DNA of 64,000 nucleotides, taken from the sequence record MK250019.1; one strand, 5' to 3'. The number at the start of each line of letters is the position of its first letter. Position 1 is the first letter of the stretch. Below, in pieces: positions 1,434-43,950 of this stretch. Both the position numbers and the translations under genes were made by a program. The notes below the pieces were generated by a model that was not told where the DNA came from, did not search any database, and was given only the letters and a program-made list of their open reading frames with translations.

Positions 1434-2883
1434 TTAGATTTTTGGTATATTAAAATTTGGGGTTGGTATATTAGGCGGCTGATAACTATTTGTTATACTT
1501 GATGGATTACTCATTTGATTTTTTAAATCATTCATGTTATAACGACTTTGCATATTATTCATTTGTTTTTCCATACGCTGATTTTCTTCTTTATTTTGTT
1601 TTTCTTGCTCTTCCATATTTTCTTTATAAACATCTAATATATCAAGAATTTCAAAAAAAGACATTTCTTTAATATCTTGAAAACTTAGNNNNNNNNNNNN
1701 NNNNNNNNNNNNNNNNNNNNNNNNNNNNNNNNNNNNNNNNNNNNNNNNNNNNNNNNNNNNNNNNNNNNNNNNNNNNNNNNNNNNNNNNNNNNNNNNNNNN
1801 NNNNNNNNNNNNNNNNNNNNNNNNNNNNNNNNNNNNNNNNNNNNNNNNNNNNNNNNNNNNNNNNNNNNNNNNNNNNNNNNNNNNNNNNNNNNNNNNNNNN
1901 NNNNNNNNNNNNNNNNNNNNNNNNNNNNNNNNNNNNNNNNNNNNNNNNNNNNNNNNNNNNNNNNNNNNNNNNNNNNNNNNNNNNNNNNNNNNNNNNNNNN
2001 NNNNNNNNNNNNNNNNNNNNNNNNNNNNNNNNNNNNNNNNNNNNNNNNNNNNNNNNNNNNNNNNNNNNNNNNNNNNNNNNNNNNNNNNNNNNNNNNNNNN
2101 NNNNNNNNNNNNNNNNNNNNNNNNNNNNNNNNNNNNNNNNNNNNNNNNNNNNNNNNNNNNNNNNNNNNNNNNNNNNNNNNNNNNNNNNNNNNNNNNNNNN
2201 NNNNNNNNNNNNNNNNNNNNNNNNNNNNNNNNNNNNNNNNNNNNNNNNNNNNNNNNNNNNNNNNNNNNNNNNNNNNNNNNNNNNNNNNNNNNNNNNNNNN
2301 NNNNNNNNNNNNNNNNNNNNNNNNNNNNNNNNNNNNNNNNNNNNNNNNNNNNNNNNNNNNNNNNNNNNNNNNNNNNNNNNNNNNNNNNNNNNNNNNNNNN
2401 NNNNNNNNNNNNNNNNNNNNNNNNNNNNNNNNNNNNNNNNNNNNNNNNNNNNNNNNNNNNNNNNNNNNNNNNNNNNNNNNNNNNNNNNNNNNNNNNNNNT
2501 GTTTCATCTGTCATAGACCAGTGTCTAATATCACCACCTGATGCTGCACGTACAAAAATTCGTGTTCCTTCTGGATAGAAAATACCACCCGTTGGAAGAG
2601 ACTCTAATGGTAATTCAAGAAATCCCATACCACTGTCATGAATTTCTTTCTTCAATTCATCCTGACGTATTGCATGTGCTTCTCTCATACTTGGTCGTGC
2701 TTTCGCATCTGCAACTTGCTCTGCAAAATGTTCCTGTGCTGTTTGTACATTTTCTACACTTGGTGCTTTCTTTGTGTTTGCTTTTGTCTTTCCTTGTTCA
2801 ATCTCTGCAAGATGTGCTGCACCTTCTGCTGTCTATGCATACTGTGCAAGAACATCTTCTACTGTATGTTTCTAATCTGACAT
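1434..2883 (-). CDS. putative baseplate hub / tail assembly protein(s), T4 gp26/gp51-like; middle lost in N gap, may be two genes
   Basis: With TAG=Q the 1669..2688 frame extends to ATG 2883. LESLPTGGIFYPEGTRIFVR resembles myophage gp26-like proteins. The end LSFQDIKEMSFFEILDILDVYKENMEEQ resembles gp51-like chaperone ends. Confidence 0.4.
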
Positions 2884-2954
2884 AATTTCGAAATTATTGT
2901 TTGTTTTATTTTATACTAAATTATTTAACTTTTGTTTACTTTATTTTATTAAGA

Positions 2955-5118
2955 CTAGTATTCCACTTTTCCTTCATATAGAGTTGATTGNNNNNNNNNN
3001 NNNNNNNNNNNNNNNNNNNNNNNNNNNNNNNNNNNNNNNNNNNNNNNNNNNNNNNNNNNNNNNNNNNNNNNNNNNNNNNNNNNNNNNNNNNNNNNNNNNN
3101 NNNNNNNNNNNNNNNNNNNNNNNNNNNNNNNNNNNNNNNNNNNNNNNNNNNNNNNNNNNNNNNNNNNNNNNNNNNNNNNNNNNNNNNNNNNNNNNNNNNN
3201 NNNNNNNNNNNNNNNNNNNNNNNNNNNNNNNNNNNNNNNNNNNNNNNNNNNNNNNNNNNNNNNNNNNNNNNNNNNNNNNNNNNNNNNNNNNNNNNNNNNN
3301 NNNNNNNNNNNNNNNNNNNNNNNNNNNNNNNNNNNNNNNNNNNNNNNNNNNNNNNNNNNNNNNNNNNNNNNNNNNNNNNNNNNNNNNNNNNNNNNNNNNN
3401 NNNNNNNNNNNNNNNNNNNNNNNNNNNNNNNNNNNNNNNNNNNNNNNNNNNNNNNNNNNNNNNNNNNNNNNNNNNNNNNNNNNNNNNNNNNNNNNNNNNN
3501 NNNNNNNNNNNNNNNNNNNNNNNNNNNNNNNNNNNNNNNNNNNNNNNNNNNNNNNNNNNNNNNNNNNNNNNNNCAAATAGATTTACAATACATATTATTT
3601 CTTATTTGTGGTTTAGGTGTATATTTACATTTCCAAAATGAACCTTCTATATCTTTATTATGTTTTGAATAATCGATTATATTAGTAAAACTTTCAATTG
3701 ACTCTATTGCATCAGTTTCACCATCACTTTCTAATAATCTTGTATTTGGAACATAATTATATGTAACTGCAACTTCATTATAAATAATCCATTTTGCTGC
3801 ATCATTNNNNNNNNNNNNNNNNNNNNNNNNNNNNNNNNTATTAGATAAATTATCATAAAACGCTTCAGAAACCAATGGAATCTCATTATTTTCTATTCTT
3901 CTCATAATGTCATCTGAAAGTTCAACTACATTATTTCCTTCACCATATACTGGATAATATACAATTTCTTTATTATCTGTATCTTCATATATTCTTACAT
4001 TGAAGTAATCAGAATTCGACTTATATTTTATAGCAATCTGATTTATTGGATCTTGATGGAATGTACTTGCATATATATTAGGATCTGTTGATGTAAGATT
4101 ATCTTCTGAAACTGTCGCAAAATTTACAATTAATGTTGGATCACTCAATATCTAATATTCTAATTTACGTTGTGTATTATCATTTGGTATTTTCCCATAA
4201 TATTGAATATTAGTTTTCTAAACATCATTTTTATCTGTAACAGTATTTTCTGTTCTGATTAATTCGCCATGTCCATATTTACTTTCTACTGATAAATTTA
4301 AATCACCATTTAATGACATATAATATGCAGATGGTACTAAAAATTCTATATATCTATCATAAAAACAACCATTCTGATATATTGGAGATTTATGCCATTT
4401 AACAACATTATGAAGAATCAAACATTCTTTAGGGNNNNNNNNNNNNNNNNNNNNNNNNNNNNNNNNNNNNAATGATAATTTTTCAACCTCAGTTTGTTTT
4501 GCATTGTTCTAATATGCAGACTATACTGCAGTTGGATTATCATTTGTAGTTGCAACATTATTATCATCTATCAATATATATTCTGTTTCGAATATAGGAT
4601 TATGATATTCATCATACATTTTATATGTATTACTATTAGGATACATTTTCTAAGAAGGTGTTAAATATCTTGCATTCGTTTTTACTTGTAATGTTATACC
4701 AGCTAATCTATCTAATGTAAAACCATATATAAAANNNNNNNNNNNNNNNNNNNNNNNNNNTTTACCACCTTTATGTTCTGTAAATGTATCAACATTATCT
4801 TTAATATTCAATAAAGATTCGTTACTATATACTTTACTACTATGTTTATCTATTACATGTTTATCTAATATTGAACTATCAACATTTAATGTATTTTGTT
4901 TTGTTAATCCAACAAATGTATATTCTGACATTGATTCATCTGGAAACTTAATAAAATACTAAGCATTAGAATATCTGTCATTATCTATATCCTATGGTTT
5001 TTCTGTATAATATACATTACCATCTTTACCTATATATACTGTATAATCTGTTGTTTTTTCATCAGGCGTATCATTTGCATCATACTAATTAGCTACATAT
5101 TCTAACATTATCTGATTA
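2955..5118 (-). CDS. large TAG-containing protein, probably structural; start lies in N gap
   Basis: Track ORFs 2955..4148, 4218..4421, 4650..4931 and the 3' part of 5085..5468 share one frame and are separated by TAG. Several N gaps interrupt it. Confidence 0.45.
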
Positions 5119-5972: not shown

Positions 5973-6255
5973 AATATTATAAATTATTTTTTAAATTCAT
6001 TAAAAATATTTCTCAAAAATGTAGACTTTTTCACAAAAGCCCAGTATAATAAATATCTTAGATGTTTAGGTTGAGATAGATATTATATATAATATGTAAA
6101 AAATTTAATTTTTAAGAAATAATTTTAAATATTTATTTTTGTTAAATATTATATATAATTTTTAATTAATATTCTTTTTAATTATTAATATTATTTAGAA
6201 TTTGTATAAATTAATATATAAATAATATTGATTATCAAATAGTTATAAATTATTT

Positions 6256-7800
6256 TTAGTGTCTATTAAAAATAATTTGTAAAAATGTAGACTTTTTTGA
6301 GAATANNNNNNNNNNNNNNNNNNNNNNNNNNNNNNNNNNNNNNNNNNNNNNNNNNNNNNNNNNNNNNNNNNNNNNNNNNNNNNNNNNNNNNNNNNNNNNN
6401 NNNNNNNNNNNNNNNNNNNNNNNNNNNNNNNNNNNNNNNNNNNNNNNNNNNNNNNNNNNNNNNNNNNNNNNNNNNNNNNNNNNNNNNNNNNNNNNNNNNN
6501 NNNNNNNNNNNNNNNNNNNNNNNNNNNNNNNNNNNNNNNNNNNNNNNNNNNNNNNNNNNNNNNNNNNNNNNNNNNNNNNNNNNNNNNNNNNNNNNNNNNN
6601 NNNNNNNNNNNNNNNNNNNNNNNNNNNNNNNNNNNNNNNNNNNNNNNNNNNNNNNNNNNNNNNNNNNNNNNNNNNNNNNNNNNNNNNNNNNNNNNNNNNN
6701 NNNNNNNNNNNNNNNNNNNNNNNNNNNNNNNNNNNNNNNNNNNNNNNNNNNNNNNNNNNNNNNNNNNNNNNNNNNNNNNNNNNNNNNNNNNNNNNNNNNN
6801 NNNNNNNNNNNNNNNNNNNNNNNNNNNNNNNNNNNNNNNNNNNNNNNNNNNNNNNNNNNNNNNNNNNNNNNNNNNNNNNNNNNNNNNNNNNNNNNNNNNN
6901 NNNNNNNNNNNNNNNNNNNNNNNNNNNNNNNNNNNNNNNNNNNNNNNNNNNNNNNNNNNNNNNNNNNNNNNNNNNNNNNNNNNNNNNNNNNNNNNNNNNN
7001 NNNNNNNNNNNNNNNNNNNNNNNNNNNNNNNNNNNNNNNNNNNNNNNNNNNNNNNNNNNNNNNNNNNNNNNNNNNNNNNNNNNNTTTGGAAATCTATAAA
7101 TTCTATCAGGATTGAGTTTCTTTCTTGTATTAATTAAAAGTTCTCGATCTTCTGGATGTTCATTTAAATGTCTTCCATAATCATAATAACAACCATAAAT
7201 ATATTGCATATGACCTATATTACATAAACCGCAATATTCTGTATGCAAACCATAATCATTTAGAAATGTTAAAATATTAATTGAACCCTGACGTCTAAAA
7301 GTATATGTAAAATCAAGCGGTGTTTTTCTTTCTTTAATAGGATTTACAATTTTCTTATTAAGACCGCGTGCTTTATAGATTTGANNNNNNNNNNNNNNNN
7401 NNNNNNNNNNNNNNNNNNNNNNNNNNNNNNNNNNNNNNNNNNNNNNNNNNNNNNNNNNNNNNNNNNNNNNNNCTTCACCTATAATAAAATTATCATCTAC
7501 AAATAAAGCTTCAAGAATATTAGGATTTGCCTTTACAAGTAATGATATAAATTTATTAAGTTCATACCATTTATTATCATTCTTTGAATCCGCGATTTCT
7601 TCTTTATATGTATTATAACCAAGAAGTTCTTTAATTGAGCAAATGTAAATTCCACCTGAATCTTTATCACTTTCTGGAGTATCTAGCCCATATGAAACCG
7701 AACCCCTGATATATTCAATAAGTAATCTTCCATCTTTTCTGATTTTATCAAATTCAGGAATTCCTACAGTCTCTGTTTTAAAATTCTTATATGATTTCAT
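6256..7800 (-). CDS. DNA polymerase beta-superfamily nucleotidyltransferase (PF10127/RlaP-like); C-terminus in N gap, true end uncertain
   Basis: YIRGSVSYGLDTPESDKDSGGIY is a GS..YG....SDxD motif; ANPNILEAL follows. Confidence 0.7.
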   Translation of the reverse strand: MKSYKNFKTETVGIPEFDKIRKDGRLLIEYIRGSVSYGLDTPESDKDSGGIYICSIKELLGYNTYKEEIADSKNDNKWYELNKFISLLVKANPNILEALFVDDNFIIGEXXXXXXXXXXXXXXXXXXXXXXXXXXXXXXQIYKARGLNKKIVNPIKERKTPLDFTYTFRRQGSINILTFLNDYGLHTEYCGLCNIGHMQYIYGCYYDYGRHLNEHPEDRELLINTRKKLNPDRIYRFPXXXXXXXXXXXXXXXXXXXXXXXXXXXXXXXXXXXXXXXXXXXXXXXXXXXXXXXXXXXXXXXXXXXXXXXXXXXXXXXXXXXXXXXXXXXXXXXXXXXXXXXXXXXXXXXXXXXXXXXXXXXXXXXXXXXXXXXXXXXXXXXXXXXXXXXXXXXXXXXXXXXXXXXXXXXXXXXXXXXXXXXXXXXXXXXXXXXXXXXXXXXXXXXXXXXXXXXXXXXXXXXXXXXXXXXXXXXXXXXXXXXXXXXXXXXXXXXXXXXXXFSKKSTFLQIIFNRH

Positions 7801-7811
7801 TTTTTATAATT

Positions 7812-8438
7812 TTATTTCTTTTCTCTATCTCTAACTGCTTTAAATAATGCGGTTGCCCATGTTTCAAGATCTGATGGATCAACTGGAATAATATCTCTTG
7901 TTAACCATTGTTCTTCTGGCATTCCTTCAATATTAATAAAATTATCATGCTTCAGATTTTTAACAACATCTTCTGAATGTGTAATAACAAGAATACCATA
8001 ATTATTTTTCAATATATCAGGAAATTTTTCATTCAGCATGTTACATACACCTGTTTGAACTTCACGAGACATTCCGATTTCTAATTCATCTATAACTATG
8101 AATTTATTTTTAGCATGTGATAACATACCATTCAAAAGATTTATAGTTGAATCAGACGTTGAGCACCAAGGAAGATCATGATTCATATCAGAAAGTGCAC
8201 TATATTCAGGTCTACTTTCCGTTCTTGTCTGCATAGAAACACTAATAACAGCTTTATTTGCAGGAATATCTTTTTTATTTGAGATATAAAAAGCCAACTG
8301 CTTTCTGATAAGAGATTTTCCTAATGCATTACCACCAGTTAAAATAGTTATTTTATCTACTGGAATACTATCACATATATCAAGTATATGATTTATATGC
8401 TTATTTAATGTTTCTTTTGATGTATCTTTATAATCCAT
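7812..8438 (-). CDS. small ABC-type/AAA P-loop ATPase
   Basis: Walker A TGGNALGKS, Walker B FIVIDELE and H-loop LVITHS. Confidence 0.7.
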   Translation of the reverse strand: MDYKDTSKETLNKHINHILDICDSIPVDKITILTGGNALGKSLIRKQLAFYISNKKDIPANKAVISVSMQTRTESRPEYSALSDMNHDLPWCSTSDSTINLLNGMLSHAKNKFIVIDELEIGMSREVQTGVCNMLNEKFPDILKNNYGILVITHSEDVVKNLKHDNFINIEGMPEEQWLTRDIIPVDPSDLETWATALFKAVRDREKK

Positions 8439-40481: not shown

Positions 40482-40734
40482 CGGTACGGCTCTAAAGGAG
40501 AGAGCATCATTTATGATTAATGATGACGAAGATTTGTTCGTAAGTTAATCTTTACTAAGAGAATATACAATATTTAGTTATATAGAAGTAATTTAATTGT
40601 TATAATGCGAATACAATTTTATATGAAACTATATATGTCATTTATGAGATTATAGTGAAGAATAGCATTTACAGTAACTATAATAAGATGATATAAACAA
40701 TATAACTTCTGTGGTTCGATTCCACACGTACTGA
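40482..40734 (+). ncRNA. tRNA-like RNA with a ~175-nt insertion in the anticodon arm
   Basis: Acceptor CGGTACG/CGTACTG, D stem GCTC/GAGC, stem ATCAT/ATGAT and T arm TGTGG-TTCGATT-CCACA. Confidence 0.6.
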
Positions 40735-40753
40735 CTAATAAACATATAACATT

Positions 40754-40972
40754 ATGAAAGAAGAAATTAAATTCTTAGGTAAAACACCAAGAGAAATTGC
40801 AGAACGTTACTTCAATAAATCATATGAAGGTAAAGAACGATATGATATTTTAGTTGAAGGCTTTATTGAGGGATTTAATTATCTATTTCCTCATTATGAT
40901 ATAGCTAATACTTTGGTTGAAACATTTGAACGAATTAAAGAATTAGAAAATAAAGATAAAAAAGATTCATAA
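40754..40972 (+). CDS. hypothetical protein
   Basis: 72-aa ORF between the RNA elements. Confidence 0.55.
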   Translation: MKEEIKFLGKTPREIAERYFNKSYEGKERYDILVEGFIEGFNYLFPHYDIANTLVETFERIKELENKDKKDS

Positions 40973-40997
40973 TTATTTTTTTATTTGAAATAAAATA

Positions 40998-41007
40998 TGT
41001 ATCTTTG
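40998..41007 (+). promoter_or_regulatory. Bacteroidota-type -7 promoter element heading an ORF-free RNA unit
   Basis: TGTATCTTTG with no credible ORF for the following 1.1 kb. Confidence 0.7.
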
Positions 41008-41223
41008 TATTGTAAATAATGAACACCTATAAGTGTTAAGTAACATAAGGATGGAAATCTTATGGTTCGTAAGTAGTAATATCGAATAGTCCGCATAATA
41101 GGAACATGTCATTATTTTAACATTTATATAAGAATATACTACATGTCTTATATGAGCGTCAGGAGTATTGTAACAGAGTCGACGTATTTACATTTTTAGA
41201 GGCGCAGTTTTTAAATCTGACTA

Positions 41224-41257
41224 TTCTACGTAAAGTAGTGTTCTATGTAAAGTAGTG
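41224..41257 (+). repeat. tandem 17-nt repeat TTCTA(C/T)GTAAAGTAGTG x2
   Basis: 41224-41240 and 41241-41257 differ at one base. Confidence 0.8.
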
Positions 41258-41339
41258 AAGTGCAAGATACGGCGTCAGTACAAGTCTATATAATAAGTTG
41301 CAAATAAAAATAGAAACTGTTAAAATTCGTATCTAATTT

Positions 41340-41511
41340 GTCTGTATTTCACAATGGTTAATGAGGTACATGAAAAGTGATTTGGAAGAATCATTATAAA
41401 CATATTATGATTAAGATAACGTTCAACTAAGCTATATAATAATAGTAAGTACAGCGCTGAAAATATATGTTTATATGTATTGCGGTTGTGGTTCGATTCC
41501 ACATACAGACA
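41340..41511 (+). ncRNA. tRNA-like RNA with a ~103-nt insertion in the anticodon loop
   Basis: Perfect 7-bp acceptor GTCTGTA/TACAGAC, D loop with TGG, stem GTACAT/ATGTAT and the same 17-nt T arm as 40710-40726. Confidence 0.7.
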
Positions 41512-41515
41512 CGAC

Positions 41516-42025
41516 TTATATTAATGATGAAAAGTCTGCAATTAACAAAATATAAAAACATCTTAATGTACTGTTGATTATATGTTTTAATTTTGTTAAC
41601 TAAGAGATTCTTGTAAATTATAAAAATTTACAAATCGAGGGGAACGCATAACGGCAATTATGTTAGTACTTGGCGTTTAATGAAATGAATATGTATATTT
41701 GCCGATGTGCATATGAGTGACATTAAATGATAAAATTATAATAGTGTAGCGGTTCGCACGCCCGTTGGTAAAACGGGAAGGGTTTATGTTTGAAAGCATA
41801 TTAGGGGTTCGACTCCCGCTTATAAACAATTAAATTACATAATGTTCTCACGAAGAGCGAGCATCGGAAGGTGAGCAATTTAGAAAGATGTTTAAGAGTG
41901 ATCATATTAAATTGATTTCTAACAGAAATACGGTGACGTAGGAGCTGAAAAAGAACAAACGTATGGTAATGTTAGCATTATGTATTTAAAAAATATTAGT
42001 CCTCACAGACTTTACATTTTTTATA
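41516..42025 (+). ncRNA. candidate ~500-nt structured RNA
   Basis: Closing helix AAAGTCTG (41531-38)/CAGACTTT (42006-13). Internal helices include TTAACAAAAT/ATTTTGTTAA and TACATAATG/CATTATGTA. No ORF. Confidence 0.5.
41735..41827 (+). tRNA. atypical tRNA-Tyr-like (GTA) domain with a long variable arm
   Basis: D arm GTGT-AGCGGTTC-GCAC, anticodon arm CCCGT-TGGTAAA-ACGGG and T loop TTCGACT. Deviations: G33, only 3 bp in the T stem and a mismatched 1-72 pair. Confidence 0.45.
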
Positions 42026-42050
42026 ACTTTAAAATTTTGAATTTAATATT

Positions 42051-42085
42051 AAATCCGATGCTTGTAATAAGTATCGGATTTTTTT
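42051..42085 (+). terminator. intrinsic terminator closing the RNA unit
   Basis: AAATCCGATGCTT-GTAAT-AAGTATCGGATTT followed by a T run. Confidence 0.8.
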
Positions 42086-42100
42086 AATTCATAAAAAATA

Positions 42101-42110
42101 TGTATCTTTG
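42101..42110 (+). promoter_or_regulatory. Bacteroidota-type -7 promoter element upstream of nadR-pnuC
   Basis: TGTATCTTTG, intergenic. Confidence 0.75.
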
Positions 42111-42140
42111 TAATATATTAAATAATAATTAAATAATTAA

Positions 42141-43301
42141 ATGATTAAGAATATAGGAATTTGTTTTGGCGGTTATTGTCCTATGCATCAGGGACATCTT
42201 GATCTTATAATGAAAGCAAAGAAAGAAAATGATATTTGTTATGTGGTTGTTTGTGGTTATACAGATGAACCACGAGGTAATGAATTAGGTCTTAATATTA
42301 ATAATAGAAAAAGACTTATTAAAGAGTTTTTTAAAAATGATGAACTTATTCGAGTTCTTACTGTAAATGATACAGAATTAGGTATTGATGAAAGTATGTC
42401 TGAACATAATTGGAAAGTATGGACAGATTATGTAAAATATCAAATTACAGATGATCTTTTGGGTGGAGGTCCGACATTTCCATTTAGTCCTGATGAAAGG
42501 ATTGAAGCGCATGAATTGAAACTTACATTCTATGTTGGTGAAAAGTTCTATGTTGAATCATTGAATAAATTAAATATTAATGCAGTGTTAGTTGGTTACG
42601 ATGAGAATTCTCCATCTAATAGAAGTAATGATATATCAGCAACATATATTAGACAAAATCCTCAATATTATTGGGATAAGATTGTATCAACATTTAAACC
42701 TGCATTAACAAAGAAAATTCTTGTATTAGGTACAGCATCAGAAGGGAAATCAACACTTGTTAAAGATATTGGTAATTATTTTAATATACCATATACAACA
42801 GAATTCGGTAGGGATTATATGGAGAAACATTGTATGTTAGATCCTGATATTACTGTAAATGATTTTGTTGAATTCCTTATTGGACAGAGACAATATTATT
42901 TTGATGCTTTGAATGATAAAGGAAATAAGGGCGTTATCATTTCAGATACTGATAATCTCGTTACACTTATGTATGCAAAAGCATATGTATCTGATAATAA
43001 TATGCAAATTACTGAAGATGAATATAACAATATATTGAAACCACTTGCAAAATCATTACAAACAGGTGTTTCATGGGATGTAATTTATCTTATCAAACCG
43101 CATAATAAATTTGTTGATGATGGAACACGTTACATGAATCAATCTTCAATAGATGAGAGAATGAAGAATTATAAAATTCTTTTATCATTACTTGAAGAGT
43201 TCGGTTTACTTGATAAAGTAATTGAATTGAATGGTTCTTATATGGATCATTTTAATTATGTTAAGGATTATATCACAAAATTATATGATAAAGAAAATTA
43301 A
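42141..43301 (+). CDS. nadR: NadR-type bifunctional NMN adenylyltransferase / ribosylnicotinamide kinase (no HTH)
   Basis: FGGYCPMHQGH (HxGH), ISATYIR, P-loop GTASEGKSTL, EFGRDY and SDTD. Confidence 0.9.
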   Translation: MIKNIGICFGGYCPMHQGHLDLIMKAKKENDICYVVVCGYTDEPRGNELGLNINNRKRLIKEFFKNDELIRVLTVNDTELGIDESMSEHNWKVWTDYVKYQITDDLLGGGPTFPFSPDERIEAHELKLTFYVGEKFYVESLNKLNINAVLVGYDENSPSNRSNDISATYIRQNPQYYWDKIVSTFKPALTKKILVLGTASEGKSTLVKDIGNYFNIPYTTEFGRDYMEKHCMLDPDITVNDFVEFLIGQRQYYFDALNDKGNKGVIISDTDNLVTLMYAKAYVSDNNMQITEDEYNNILKPLAKSLQTGVSWDVIYLIKPHNKFVDDGTRYMNQSSIDERMKNYKILLSLLEEFGLLDKVIELNGSYMDHFNYVKDYITKLYDKEN

Positions 43302-43950
43302 TAATATATTATATTCAGAGTTTATAGAAGGAAGAAATATTAATGAACATTTGTTTATGCTCATTGGTATTTTCCTTCAATTAATTGCATGGTATATAAC
43401 TAAAGATTCATTGATTTCTTTAATATCAGGTGTAACTGGTATTATATCTGTTATATTATGTTCACAAAGAAAGATTTCATTTTATTTCTTCGGCTTTATA
43501 CAATTAGGAACATATATGTATCTTGCATGGCAGCAAAGATTTTATGGTGAATTAATAGAGAATATATTTTACATTATTACTATGTTAATAGGTATTGTAG
43601 TATGGTTAAAAAATTATAATACTGAAGAACAAATAGTAGAATCTAAAAGACTTTCTGATAGGTTATTCTATATAATATGTAGTATAATGGTGTTTATCTG
43701 TGTATTATTTGGTTATTATATGAAATACTTTACAGATAATACACAACCATTTATGGATTCATTTTCAACAGTACCTGCATTTATAGCACAGACATTGTTA
43801 ATGTTACGATATAGAGAACAATGGATATTCTGGATTATAATTGATGTTGTTTCTATATTCATGTGGATGTTTGCTGATAATTGGATAATGGTTATTCAAT
43901 TTATATTTTGGACAATGAATTGCATATATGGTTATAGAAAATGGAAATAA
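43285..43950 (+). CDS. pnuC: PnuC-family nicotinamide riboside transporter
   Basis: Multi-TM protein with ATG 43285 overlapping the nadR end. Motifs PFMDSFST, AQTLLMLRYREQWIFWIIIDVVSI and YGYRKW. Confidence 0.9.
   Translation: MIKKINNILYSEFIEGRNINEHLFMLIGIFLQLIAWYITKDSLISLISGVTGIISVILCSQRKISFYFFGFIQLGTYMYLAWQQRFYGELIENIFYIITMLIGIVVWLKNYNTEEQIVESKRLSDRLFYIICSIMVFICVLFGYYMKYFTDNTQPFMDSFSTVPAFIAQTLLMLRYREQWIFWIIIDVVSIFMWMFADNWIMVIQFIFWTMNCIYGYRKWK

What the first reader, a model, noticed from the sequence alone, without database searches (positions are those of the whole stretch)
41516..42085. Candidate ~500-nt large structured RNA with an embedded tRNA-Tyr-like domain
Seen: it starts just after the previous RNA, is closed by an end-to-end helix, contains many perfect helices in AT-rich sequence, embeds a deviant GTA-anticodon cloverleaf (41735-41827) and ends at a strong terminator. 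Known: large ornate phage-associated ncRNAs such as GOLLD and ROOL occur beside tRNA genes. Inference: this is a member of such a class or a new one. I cannot assign it to a known family.
Basis: partly seen in the sequence, partly recalled or inferred. Interest (0 to 1): 0.7.

Follow-up and report, generated by a model that had tools for sequence, protein, structure and literature searches.

The report
Modular structured RNA of Lak megaphage
The interval is a real, conserved, non-coding structured RNA of the gut megaphage Lak, built from three separately folding modules (one shaped like a transfer RNA), belonging to no catalogued RNA family and of unknown function.

Summary
The window is Prevotella phage Lak-A2. 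Positions 41516-42085 are the 3' half of a 1.17-kb ORF-free gap. A Lak promoter-like motif lies at 40993-41009 and an intrinsic terminator at 42051-42085.

The structure is real. The fold z-score is -4.2. The conserved part (41513-41984) is 470-473 nt in every Lak A, B and C variant, although A and B share only about 74% identity. Of 74 proposed base pairs in 15 helices, 99.4% of cells are paired. 23 pairs show changes on both sides, against 1-5 in slid controls.

It is not one RNA closed end to end. I found no convincing covarying helix linking modules. The three modules are:
- a five-way junction with kissing loops (41519-41727);
- a deviant tRNA-like cloverleaf (41735-41827);
- a 150-nt domain with invariant loops (41836-41984).

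Rfam gives no GOLLD, ROOL, RNase P, tmRNA or group I match. The cloverleaf fails the tRNA threshold and lacks U33, and its "anticodon" differs between clades.

Two more RNAs ending in tRNA-like modules lie just upstream. My best guess, at moderate confidence, is that the tRNA-like modules are handles for host tRNA-processing enzymes, which cut a polycistronic transcript into stable RNAs. Their function is unknown.

The parts
40993..41009 (+). Promoter-like motif of the RNA operon. It contains TATCTTTG, which fits the Bacteroidota -7 element TAnnTTTG.
   Evidence: Read from the sequence. It is invariant in the A and B clades. The core TGTATCTTTG occurs 55 times in the 541-kb Lak-A1 genome, where I estimate about 2 by chance from base composition. 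The same motif stands before nadR at 42096-42112. The consensus itself is from my own knowledge.
41014..41511 (+). Upstream RNA ('the previous RNA'). It has an optional 5' domain (41016-41265), a leader hairpin (41266-71 with 41328-33) and a tRNA-like module (41340-41511) whose 'anticodon' arm is greatly expanded.
   Evidence: The acceptor GTCTGTA/TACAGAC becomes GGTTATG/CATAACC in the B clade, four compensatory pairs. RNAalifold finds 11 pairs with double changes in the 5' part. Variant L034 lacks 41016-41265. In B4 the module scores 22.5 bits against Rfam tRNA, below the 29-bit cutoff.
41513..41734 (+). 5' module (L2), a five-way junction. Closing helix 41521-26 with 41721-26. Hairpins 41542-51/41590-99, 41611-19/41625-33, 41646-51/41658-63 and 41694-99/41704-09. 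The loops of the last two kiss (41653-56 with 41700-03). The joining strands are conserved (AUGAAAAG, AAGAGAUU).
   Evidence: z = -3.27. Each of helices 1-5 has 1-2 pairs with double changes. The kissing pair G41653-C41703 becomes U-A in the B clade. The hairpin 41611-33 is present in B4 with a compensated sequence, GTAACTA/TAGTTAC, read from the alignment.
41735..41827 (+). tRNA-like cloverleaf. It has a 6-bp A-U acceptor, a D-arm with GG, a 5-6-bp 'anticodon' stem capped by UGGUAAA (A clade) or UGAUAAA (B clade), a long variable arm, and a T-arm with a canonical loop but only 3 G-C pairs.
   Evidence: ARAGORN calls it. The anticodon-like stem has 3 pairs, and the variable arm 3 pairs, with double changes. 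Rfam tRNA gives no hit in A2 and 23.1 bits, below 29, in B4.
41836..41984 (+). 3' module (D3). Closing helix 41836-44 with 41976-84. Helix 41861-66 with 41931-37. Long hairpin 41880-85/41917-22 plus 41890-95/41907-12, with invariant 11-nt loop RAGUGAUCAUA. Hairpin 41954-57/41970-73 with invariant 12-nt loop AACGUAUGGUAA. Invariant strands at 41846-60, 41867-78 and 41938-47.
   Evidence: z = -3.02. Helices 12, 13 and 15 have 4, 3 and 3 pairs with double changes. The closing helix is kept in B by a G-C to A-U change and a one-pair deletion on both strands. Covariance model R1 finds one copy per Lak genome and nothing elsewhere.
41985..42050 (+). Unconserved spacer.
   Evidence: It cannot be aligned between the A and B clades, and part of it is deleted in L034.
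42051..42085 (+). Intrinsic terminator: a 14-pair hairpin and a T-run.
   Evidence: The B clade has a different hairpin plus T-run at the equivalent place. In run X1 a contig ends at 42059 and depth falls to about 0-1 until 42270.
40482..40734 (+). A third RNA ending in a tRNA-like module, just upstream ('Unit 0'). Acceptor 40482-88 with 40727-33, T-arm 40710-26. It shares the motifs UUAAUGAUGA and CUAAGAGA with the 5' module, and GUUCGUAAGU with the upstream RNA.
   Evidence: The B4 homologue has the acceptor CAGTATATA/TATATACTG, which is compensatory.

Best explanation
Positions 41513-42085 are the distal part of a Lak-megaphage non-coding RNA operon of about 1.07 kb. It runs from the promoter-like motif at 40993-41009 to the terminator at 42051-42085. 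The transcript is a string of independently folding RNA modules:
- optional 5' domain;
- leader hairpin;
- tRNA-like module (41340-41511);
- five-way-junction module L2;
- tRNA-like cloverleaf;
- module D3.

Shown: the region is non-coding, is under purifying selection, and functions on the + strand. At least 15 helices are kept by compensatory change. The cloverleaf is a tRNA mimic and not a normal decoding tRNA.

Inferred: the tRNA-like modules present the acceptor/T-arm 'top half' and the D-loop/T-loop elbow. These are what RNase P, RNase Z or 3' exonucleases, and the CCA-adding enzyme recognise. The modules would therefore act as built-in processing and stabilising handles ('tRNA punctuation'). 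They would cut the primary transcript at about 41339/41340, 41511/41512, 41734/41735 and 41827/41828, releasing L2 (about 220 nt) and D3 (150-260 nt) as stable structured RNAs.

L2 and D3 have invariant loops and junction strands, so they are the likely effectors, probably binding a protein or another RNA. Their target is unknown.
For: - Identity: the region is 100% identical to Lak-A2, 96-97% to Lak-A1 and C1, and 74% to nine Lak-B genomes. Published genome-wide identity between A and B is 61-65% (PMC6784885). The spacer after 41984 cannot be aligned.
- Length is fixed at 470-473 nt in 15 distinct variants.
- Covariation: 74 pairs, 99.4% paired; 23 pairs with double changes against 1-5 when the 3' partners are slid; 0 of 500 shuffles reach the observed score.
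- Strand: G-U pairs occur in several helices. They would be A-C mismatches on the other strand, so the + strand is the RNA. This agrees with the promoter and terminator.
- No ORF.
- Modules fold on their own, and no covarying helix between modules stands out.
- Three consecutive units each end in a T-arm plus acceptor, and the acceptors of the two upstream units covary.
- Short A/U-rich linkers of 8-10 nt flank the cloverleaf in both clades.
- In run X1, contigs break at about 41530 and at 42059. Contig depths are 51 (40903-41534) and 13.8 (41528-42059), against 5.5-6.7 over the flanking genes. This fits differential accumulation on either side of the tRNA-like module and an end at the terminator.
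Against: - No read-level mapping of 5' or 3' ends was available. Only assembled contigs could be laid, and these cannot show ends or levels reliably. X1 is only guessed to be RNA.
- One X1 contig spans all three modules (41528-42059), so unprocessed RNA, or DNA, exists.
- The acceptor, D-stem and T-stem of the cloverleaf never vary, so covariation neither supports nor tests them.
- The acceptor is six A-U pairs, the T-stem has three pairs, and no CCA is encoded. Recognition by processing enzymes is an assumption.
- Almost all covariation reflects a single A-versus-B split, plus a few changes within the A clade. The number of independent events is small.
- Some helices were picked by scanning this same alignment.
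Confidence: 0.45

Rival explanations
1. One large ornate RNA, in the manner of GOLLD or ROOL. The roughly 470-570 nt would act as a single folded particle, and the tRNA-like domain would be an integral structural or recruiting element, not a cleavage signal.
For: The whole stretch has a fixed length of 470-473 nt in every variant. A single X1 contig covers 41528-42059. The 'anticodon' arm ends in G(G/A)UAA, which could fold like a GNRA loop and make tertiary contacts (my inference). From my own knowledge, GOLLD and ROOL occur in phages near tRNA genes.
Against: There is no Rfam match to GOLLD or ROOL, even at E up to 10. The terminal helix is absent from the B clade and from L034. No convincing covarying helix links the modules. 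Each module has its own closing helix.
Confidence: 0.25
2. A working but unusual tRNA-Tyr gene with a structured leader and trailer. For example, it could be a variant that escapes host anticodon nucleases or other defences that target tRNA-Tyr.
For: ARAGORN calls tRNA-Tyr in all clades. It has the class II architecture with a covarying variable arm, GG in the D-loop and a canonical T-loop. From my own knowledge, phage tRNAs with altered anticodon loops that evade host nucleases are known.
Against: - Position 33 is G, not the near-universal U.
- The anticodon is GTA in the A/C clade but ATA in the B clade.
- The T-stem has 3 pairs, positions 1-72 are A-A, and the discriminator is C.
- It scores below the Rfam tRNA cutoff.
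- It does not appear in the part of the published tRNAscan list that I read.
- Lak carries a separate tRNA-Tyr(GTA) elsewhere.
- This reading would not explain the conserved flanking modules.
Confidence: 0.1
3. A cis-regulatory leader (riboswitch or attenuator) that controls read-through of the terminator at 42051-42085 into the nadR-pnuC genes downstream.
For: It lies directly upstream of NadR (42141-43301) and PnuC (43231-43950), with a terminator between. From my own knowledge, NAD-related riboswitches are known upstream of pnuC.
Against: nadR has its own copy of the promoter-like motif after the terminator. The 66 nt between module D3 and the terminator are not conserved and are partly deleted in L034. 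No Rfam riboswitch matches. More distant phages with the same nadR gene lack the RNA. X1 depth is about 0 between the terminator and nadR.
Confidence: 0.05

Closest known systems
Stable RNAs of the phage T4 tRNA operon (species 1 and 2, rnaC/rnaD), and 'tRNA punctuation' generally (MALAT1-mascRNA, mitochondrial transcripts). From my own knowledge.
   Same: Phage-encoded stable RNAs of unknown function, co-transcribed with tRNA-shaped elements. The tRNA shape is thought to direct cleavage by RNase P or RNase Z, and that cleavage defines the ends.
   Different: Here the tRNA-shaped elements are themselves not normal tRNAs. The flanking RNAs are larger (about 150-330 nt) and elaborately folded. 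There is no sequence or Rfam relationship. Processing has not been shown.
GOLLD (Rfam) and ROOL (Rfam) large ornate RNAs
   Same: Large structured ncRNAs found in or near phages, often beside tRNA genes, with unknown function.
   Different: No covariance-model match at any threshold tried. This RNA is modular, with no conserved global closing helix. It is known only from Lak A/B/C megaphages.
'Enigmatic introns' of Lak tRNAs (Devoto et al. 2019, PMC6784885)
   Same: Same phage. These 80-140-nt inserts also carry an acceptor-like helix plus a T-arm and have no Rfam hit. The 5' flank and closing helix of module D3 match the ends of the tRNA-Tyr intron at 15 of 16 positions (ATTAAAYTACATAATG, with the partner strand TTATGTA).
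   Different: Those elements sit inside anticodon loops of otherwise normal tRNAs and are nearly identical between the A and B clades. The RNA here is free-standing, has its own promoter and terminator, and has diverged 26% between clades.
Bacterial Y RNAs (YrlA), tmRNA, and the tRNA-like structures of plant RNA viruses. From my own knowledge.
   Same: Non-decoding RNAs that embed a tRNA-like acceptor/T-arm/D-arm module to engage the tRNA machinery.
   Different: No Rfam match. In YrlA the RNA ends lie in the Ro-binding stem and not in the acceptor. tmRNA needs G3-U70 and a tag reading frame, which are absent here: a frame proposed at low stringency is not open in the B clade. Viral tRNA-like structures are 3'-terminal and become aminoacylated.

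Membership tests
GOLLD / ROOL | Match to the family covariance model (conserved core helices and pseudoknots) | tested here: not met
   Rfam 15 cmscan gave 0 hits at gathering thresholds over the whole window. No GOLLD or ROOL hit appeared at E up to 10 over 40700-42400, or at E up to 5 on the Lak-B4 copy.
tRNA (RF00005), functional tRNA-Tyr | Score at or above the Rfam gathering cutoff of 29 bits | tested here: not met
   A2 copy: no tRNA hit at E up to 10. B4 copy: 23.1 bits, E = 0.065. Only ARAGORN calls it.
tRNA (RF00005), functional tRNA-Tyr | U33 and an anticodon conserved among orthologues | tested here: not met
   The loop is UGGUAAA in the A/C clade and UGAUAAA in the B clade. Position 33 is G, and the anticodon is GTA or ATA.
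tRNA (RF00005), functional tRNA-Tyr | Seven-pair acceptor, five-pair T-stem and A73 discriminator (a bacterial TyrRS identity element, from my own knowledge) | tested here: not met
   Positions 1-72 are A-A and the other six acceptor pairs are all A-U. The T-stem has 3 G-C pairs and two mismatches, and position 64 varies among G, U and C without pairing. The discriminator is C.
tRNA (RF00005), functional tRNA-Tyr | Cloverleaf arms supported by covariation | tested here: inconclusive
   The anticodon-like stem and the variable arm each have 3 pairs with double changes. The acceptor, D-stem and T-stem never vary.
tmRNA | tRNA-like domain with G3-U70, a conserved tag reading frame, and a model match | tested here: not met
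   ARAGORN at default settings finds none. A permuted tmRNA appears only at a lowered threshold, and its 'tag' frame is not open in the B clade. Rfam matches only a bare T-loop, at 10.5 bits against a cutoff of 47.
Group I intron (considered for the upstream RNA, 41016-41265) | Flanking exons, a terminal G, and a match to the core model | tested here: not met
   No Rfam hit. The domain starts within a few nt of the inferred transcription start, so there is no 5' exon. The natural deletion in L034 has AA/AA borders, with no terminal G.
RNase P RNA, riboswitches (including NAD+ classes), known ribozymes | Match to any Rfam 15 model | tested here: not met
   All listed matches are short, far below the cutoffs and not conserved.
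tRNA-punctuated stable phage RNAs (T4 species 1/2 type) | Ends generated by RNase P or RNase Z at tRNA-like elements, and accumulation as discrete stable RNAs | not testable with these tools
   Only assembled contigs of public runs could be laid. They cannot show ends.

The most novel reading that the evidence does not exclude
Lak megaphages encode a previously undescribed class of tRNA-punctuated ncRNA operon. Degenerate tRNA shells (acceptor plus T-arm) would serve as portable processing and stabilising cassettes for new structured RNA modules. Those modules are the five-way junction with kissing loops and the 150-nt domain with invariant loops. The same shell logic may underlie the 'enigmatic introns' of Lak tRNAs. 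The modules would be new functional RNAs: protein-binding, host-RNA-mimicking or catalytic.
Probability: 0.35. Interest if true: 0.8.

Novelty: new variant of a known kind. Interest (0 to 1): 0.6.

Why it matters
Lak phages are among the largest known phages of the human and animal gut. Their discoverers noted large, highly expressed intergenic regions and puzzling tRNA introns, but did not characterise them.

This work gives one such region a concrete anatomy:
- three covariation-supported RNA modules with exact borders;
- two further tRNA-like-ended RNAs just upstream;
- a sequence link to the tRNA-Tyr intron element.

That makes two questions testable: what these abundant RNAs do, and whether a megaphage uses tRNA mimicry to process and stabilise its own regulatory RNAs. 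The five-way-junction module and the 3' module are also candidates for new Rfam families and for structure determination.

Tried and rejected
- Group I intron in the upstream RNA. I first saw P1, P7 and J8/7-like motifs by eye. I rejected the idea because there is no Rfam hit, no 5' exon, and the L034 deletion borders lack a terminal G.
- tRNA-Sup(TTA) with a 327-nt intron, from ARAGORN -i at 41089-41512. The stems are poor. The covarying acceptor starts at 41340 instead.
- Permuted tmRNA from ARAGORN at low stringency. The tag frame is not conserved.
- ARAGORN's tRNA-Ile(GAT) for the B4 copy of the upstream tRNA-like module. Its anticodon stem is mismatched, and an extended-arm fold fits both clades better.
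- RNAalifold's helix 41843-48/41952-57 in module D3. It gave way to the hairpin 41954-57/41970-73, which has three compensatory pairs.
- Wider homologues. Six pattern scans of viral, metagenome and genome collections, a protein-anchored search and covariance model R1 found only Lak A/C-type and B-type copies. The other hits (L005, L006, L008, L066-L071) were chance matches or ordinary tRNA arrays.
- Paralogues inside the Lak-A1 genome. There are none for module D3, whose motifs are single-copy.
- Expression and end mapping. Only Logan contigs were available, no splice-like joint lay within the interval, and depth is only suggestive.
- No whole genome was held for the window.

Full report
**Source and setting**

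The window is Prevotella phage Lak-A2. Positions 40950-42150 are 100% identical to MK250019.1, 96-97% to Lak-A1 and Lak-C1, and about 74% to nine baboon Lak-B genomes. The finding lies in a 1.17-kb gap without ORFs, 40973-42140. All neighbouring genes are on the + strand. The gap stays closed to translation when TAG is read as glutamine, the code used by Lak (PMC6784885).

A motif containing TATCTTTG stands at 40993-41009 and again at 42096-42112 before the next gene. It fits the Bacteroidota -7 promoter element, which I know from memory. Its core occurs 55 times in Lak-A1, where I estimate about 2 by chance. A 14-pair hairpin with a T-run lies at 42051-42085. Downstream are NadR and PnuC.

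Devoto et al. reported that Lak genomes have unusually large regions, up to about 1.5 kb, with no predicted proteins or tRNAs. [quoted passage not shown] This gap is such a region.

**Checking the observation**

The interval folds better than shuffled controls: z = -4.24, with 0 of 100 shuffles as good. ARAGORN calls a 93-nt tRNA-Tyr(GTA) at 41735-41827. The interval does begin just after another RNA, because a perfect T-arm plus acceptor strand ends at 41511. The terminator is real.

The end-to-end helix does not hold up. Its 3' strand (42007-14) lies in a spacer that cannot be aligned between clades. That strand is deleted in the A-type variant L034 and has no counterpart in the B clade. Conservation stops at 41984.

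**Comparative evidence**

I collected 15 distinct copies of 41513-41984:
- from GenBank Lak genomes;
- from IMG/VR;
- from metagenome contigs.

All are 470-473 nt long, although the A and B clades share only about 74% identity. Genome-wide identity between A and B is 61-65%, so this non-coding stretch is better conserved than the genome average.

RNAalifold predicts 92 pairs, 27 of them with compensatory change. I then listed every stem that pairs in all 15 sequences and combined the best of these with helices seen by folding. On the resulting 74-pair, 15-helix structure:
- 99.4% of cells are standard pairs;
- 23 pairs show changes on both sides;
- sliding the 3' partners by 1-3 columns leaves 32-45% paired and 1-5 such pairs;
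- no shuffle out of 500 reaches the observed covariation score.

Three caveats apply. Most changes trace to the single A/B split, with a few more inside the A clade (for example U-A to A-U at 41765/41773, and the changes in L034). Some helices were chosen on this same alignment. Two further helices are misaligned by MAFFT in the B clade, so I judged them by eye or after re-alignment. G-U pairs in several helices show that the + strand is the RNA.

**Anatomy: three modules**

*1. The 5' module (L2), 41513-41734, z = -3.27.* It is a five-way junction.
- A closing helix joins 41521-26 to 41721-26. Its G-C pair becomes A-U in the B clade.
- There are four hairpins.
- The loops of the hairpins at 41646-63 and 41694-41709 are complementary (GGCA with UGCC). 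This pairing covaries, becoming UGCA with UGCA in B, which argues for a kissing-loop contact.
- The joining strands are conserved.

*2. The cloverleaf, 41735-41827.*
- The anticodon-like stem and the long variable arm covary strongly.
- The acceptor (six A-U pairs), the D-stem and the three-pair T-stem never vary.
- It is not an ordinary tRNA. Position 33 is G. The 'anticodon' is GTA in the A/C clade but ATA in the B clade. Positions 1-72 are A-A. The discriminator is C.
- Rfam's tRNA model gives no hit for the A2 copy and 23.1 bits (cutoff 29) for B4.
- The stem can extend to six pairs, leaving a G(G/A)UAA pentaloop that might fold like a GNRA loop. This is my inference.
- Alone it does not fold better than shuffles (z = -0.04).

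*3. The 3' module (D3), 41836-41984, z = -3.02.*
- A 9-pair closing helix is kept in B by one compensatory change and a one-pair deletion on both strands.
- An internal helix (41861-66 with 41931-37) has four compensatory pairs.
- A long hairpin carries an invariant 11-nt loop.
- A small hairpin carries an invariant 12-nt loop.
- Several junction strands are invariant.
- The invariant CUCAC/GUGAG (41847-51 with 41871-75) would form a pseudoknot with the internal helix if both exist. It is untested because it never varies.

No convincing covarying helix links the modules. They are joined by A/U-rich linkers of 8-10 nt.

**The neighbourhood shows the same design**

The upstream RNA (41014-41511) ends in a tRNA-like module. 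Its acceptor shows four compensatory pairs between clades. Its 'anticodon' arm is expanded by about 100 nt in the A clade and about 28 nt in B. Its 5' domain also has covarying helices. That domain is entirely absent (41016-41265) in variant L034, where the promoter runs straight into the leader hairpin.

A third unit at 40482-40734 again has a perfect T-arm and a covarying acceptor. It shares short motifs with the other two units. Only these three T-loop motifs occur in the 64-kb window.

**What it is not**

Rfam 15 gives nothing at gathering thresholds in the whole window. In sensitive mode it gives nothing credible on the A2 or B4 copies. That excludes membership of GOLLD, ROOL, RNase P RNA, tmRNA, group I introns, and known riboswitches and ribozymes as currently modelled.

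A covariance model of the 3' module finds exactly one copy per Lak A/B/C genome. It finds none in four more distant Lak-like contigs that share the nadR gene, and none in the other fetched loci searched with it. The family therefore appears confined to this phage lineage in the collections I could search.

**Expression**

Only assembled contigs of public runs could be laid, and they cannot prove ends or levels.

Run X1 is from a 2019 study and only guessed to be RNA. In it:
- one contig covers 40903-41534 at depth 51;
- the next covers 41528-42059 at depth 13.8;
- contigs over the flanking genes have depths of 5.5-6.7;
- depth is about 0-1 between 42060 and 42270.

Uniform DNA would not give this pattern. 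It fits an RNA unit that ends at the terminator, with a change in abundance close to the 3' end of the upstream tRNA-like module. It also shows that molecules spanning all three modules exist. No splice-like joint falls inside the interval.

**Mechanism**

What is shown: a conserved, + strand, multi-module structured ncRNA with a non-decoding tRNA mimic.

What I infer, at roughly 45%: the tRNA-like modules act as handles for host tRNA-maturation enzymes. These would cut the polycistronic transcript into stable pieces, as proposed for the stable RNAs of the phage T4 tRNA operon and for MALAT1-mascRNA (both from my own knowledge). The released five-way-junction and 3' modules would be the effectors.

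The rivals are:
- a single ornate RNA in which the tRNA mimic is structural or recruits a factor (about 25%);
- a working but odd tRNA-Tyr, for example one that resists host nucleases (about 10%);
- a leader regulating nadR-pnuC (about 5%).

**A lead**

The 5' flank and closing helix of the 3' module match the ends of the Lak tRNA-Tyr 'intron' element at 15 of 16 positions, and the partner strand matches as well. I put the chance of this at roughly 0.02 for the comparisons made. The ends of that intron are identical in A1 and B4, although the surrounding tRNA exons differ. This suggests a shared origin for these acceptor-closed elements.

**Verdict**

The structured RNA is real and undescribed, but it is modular and not one closed large RNA. 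It belongs to no known family, and its function is unknown.

Noticed in passing
window 40482-40734: A third RNA of about 250 nt is closed by a tRNA-like acceptor (CGGTACG/CGTACTG) with a perfect T-arm (40710-26). It lies between two ORFs. The acceptor covaries in Lak-B4 (CAGTATATA/TATATACTG). ARAGORN and Rfam do not call it.
   Followed up: partly
window 41016-41265 (and about 41291-41312): The 250-nt 5' domain of the upstream RNA is entirely missing in metagenome variant L034 (UMGV01073250.1), where the promoter abuts the leader hairpin. A 22-nt piece is also missing in L030. The RNA operon gains and loses whole modules.
   Followed up: partly
window 40754-40972: A 72-aa ORF with no Pfam match separates the first tRNA-like-ended RNA from the operon promoter in the A clade. 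In Lak-B4 this ORF is absent, and the RNA's 3' end abuts the promoter.
   Followed up: no
window 40993-41009 and 42096-42112; Lak-A1 genome: The motif AAATATGTATCTTTGTA is a repeated promoter-like element. Its core TGTATCTTTG occurs 55 times in Lak-A1. It explains the many short secondary BLAST matches and the 'goes back' joints in the laid contigs.
   Followed up: partly
Lak-A1 genome (loci L036-L063): 19 of the 39 T-loop motifs (GTTCGANTC) lie outside ARAGORN-called tRNAs. Many are in ORF-free gaps or inside the tRNA 'introns'. Non-canonical tRNA-like elements are common in this phage.
   Followed up: partly
L072:256-471 (Lak-B4) and Lak-A1 about 499980-500150: The tRNA-Tyr(GTA) 'intron' has identical ends in the A and B clades, although the tRNA exons around it differ. 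This looks like a mobile or strongly constrained element. Its ends resemble the 5' flank and closing helix of the 3' module at window 41830-41844 and 41976-84.
   Followed up: partly
window 2001-4000 and 6001-8000: These stretches are extremely A+T-rich (GC 13-14%), against about 25-30% in the rest of the window.
   Followed up: no
window 42141-43950: A NadR-like gene (cytidylyltransferase plus AAA_28 domains) overlaps a PnuC NMN-transporter gene. Together they form a phage-borne NAD-salvage pair directly downstream of the RNA operon.
   Followed up: partly
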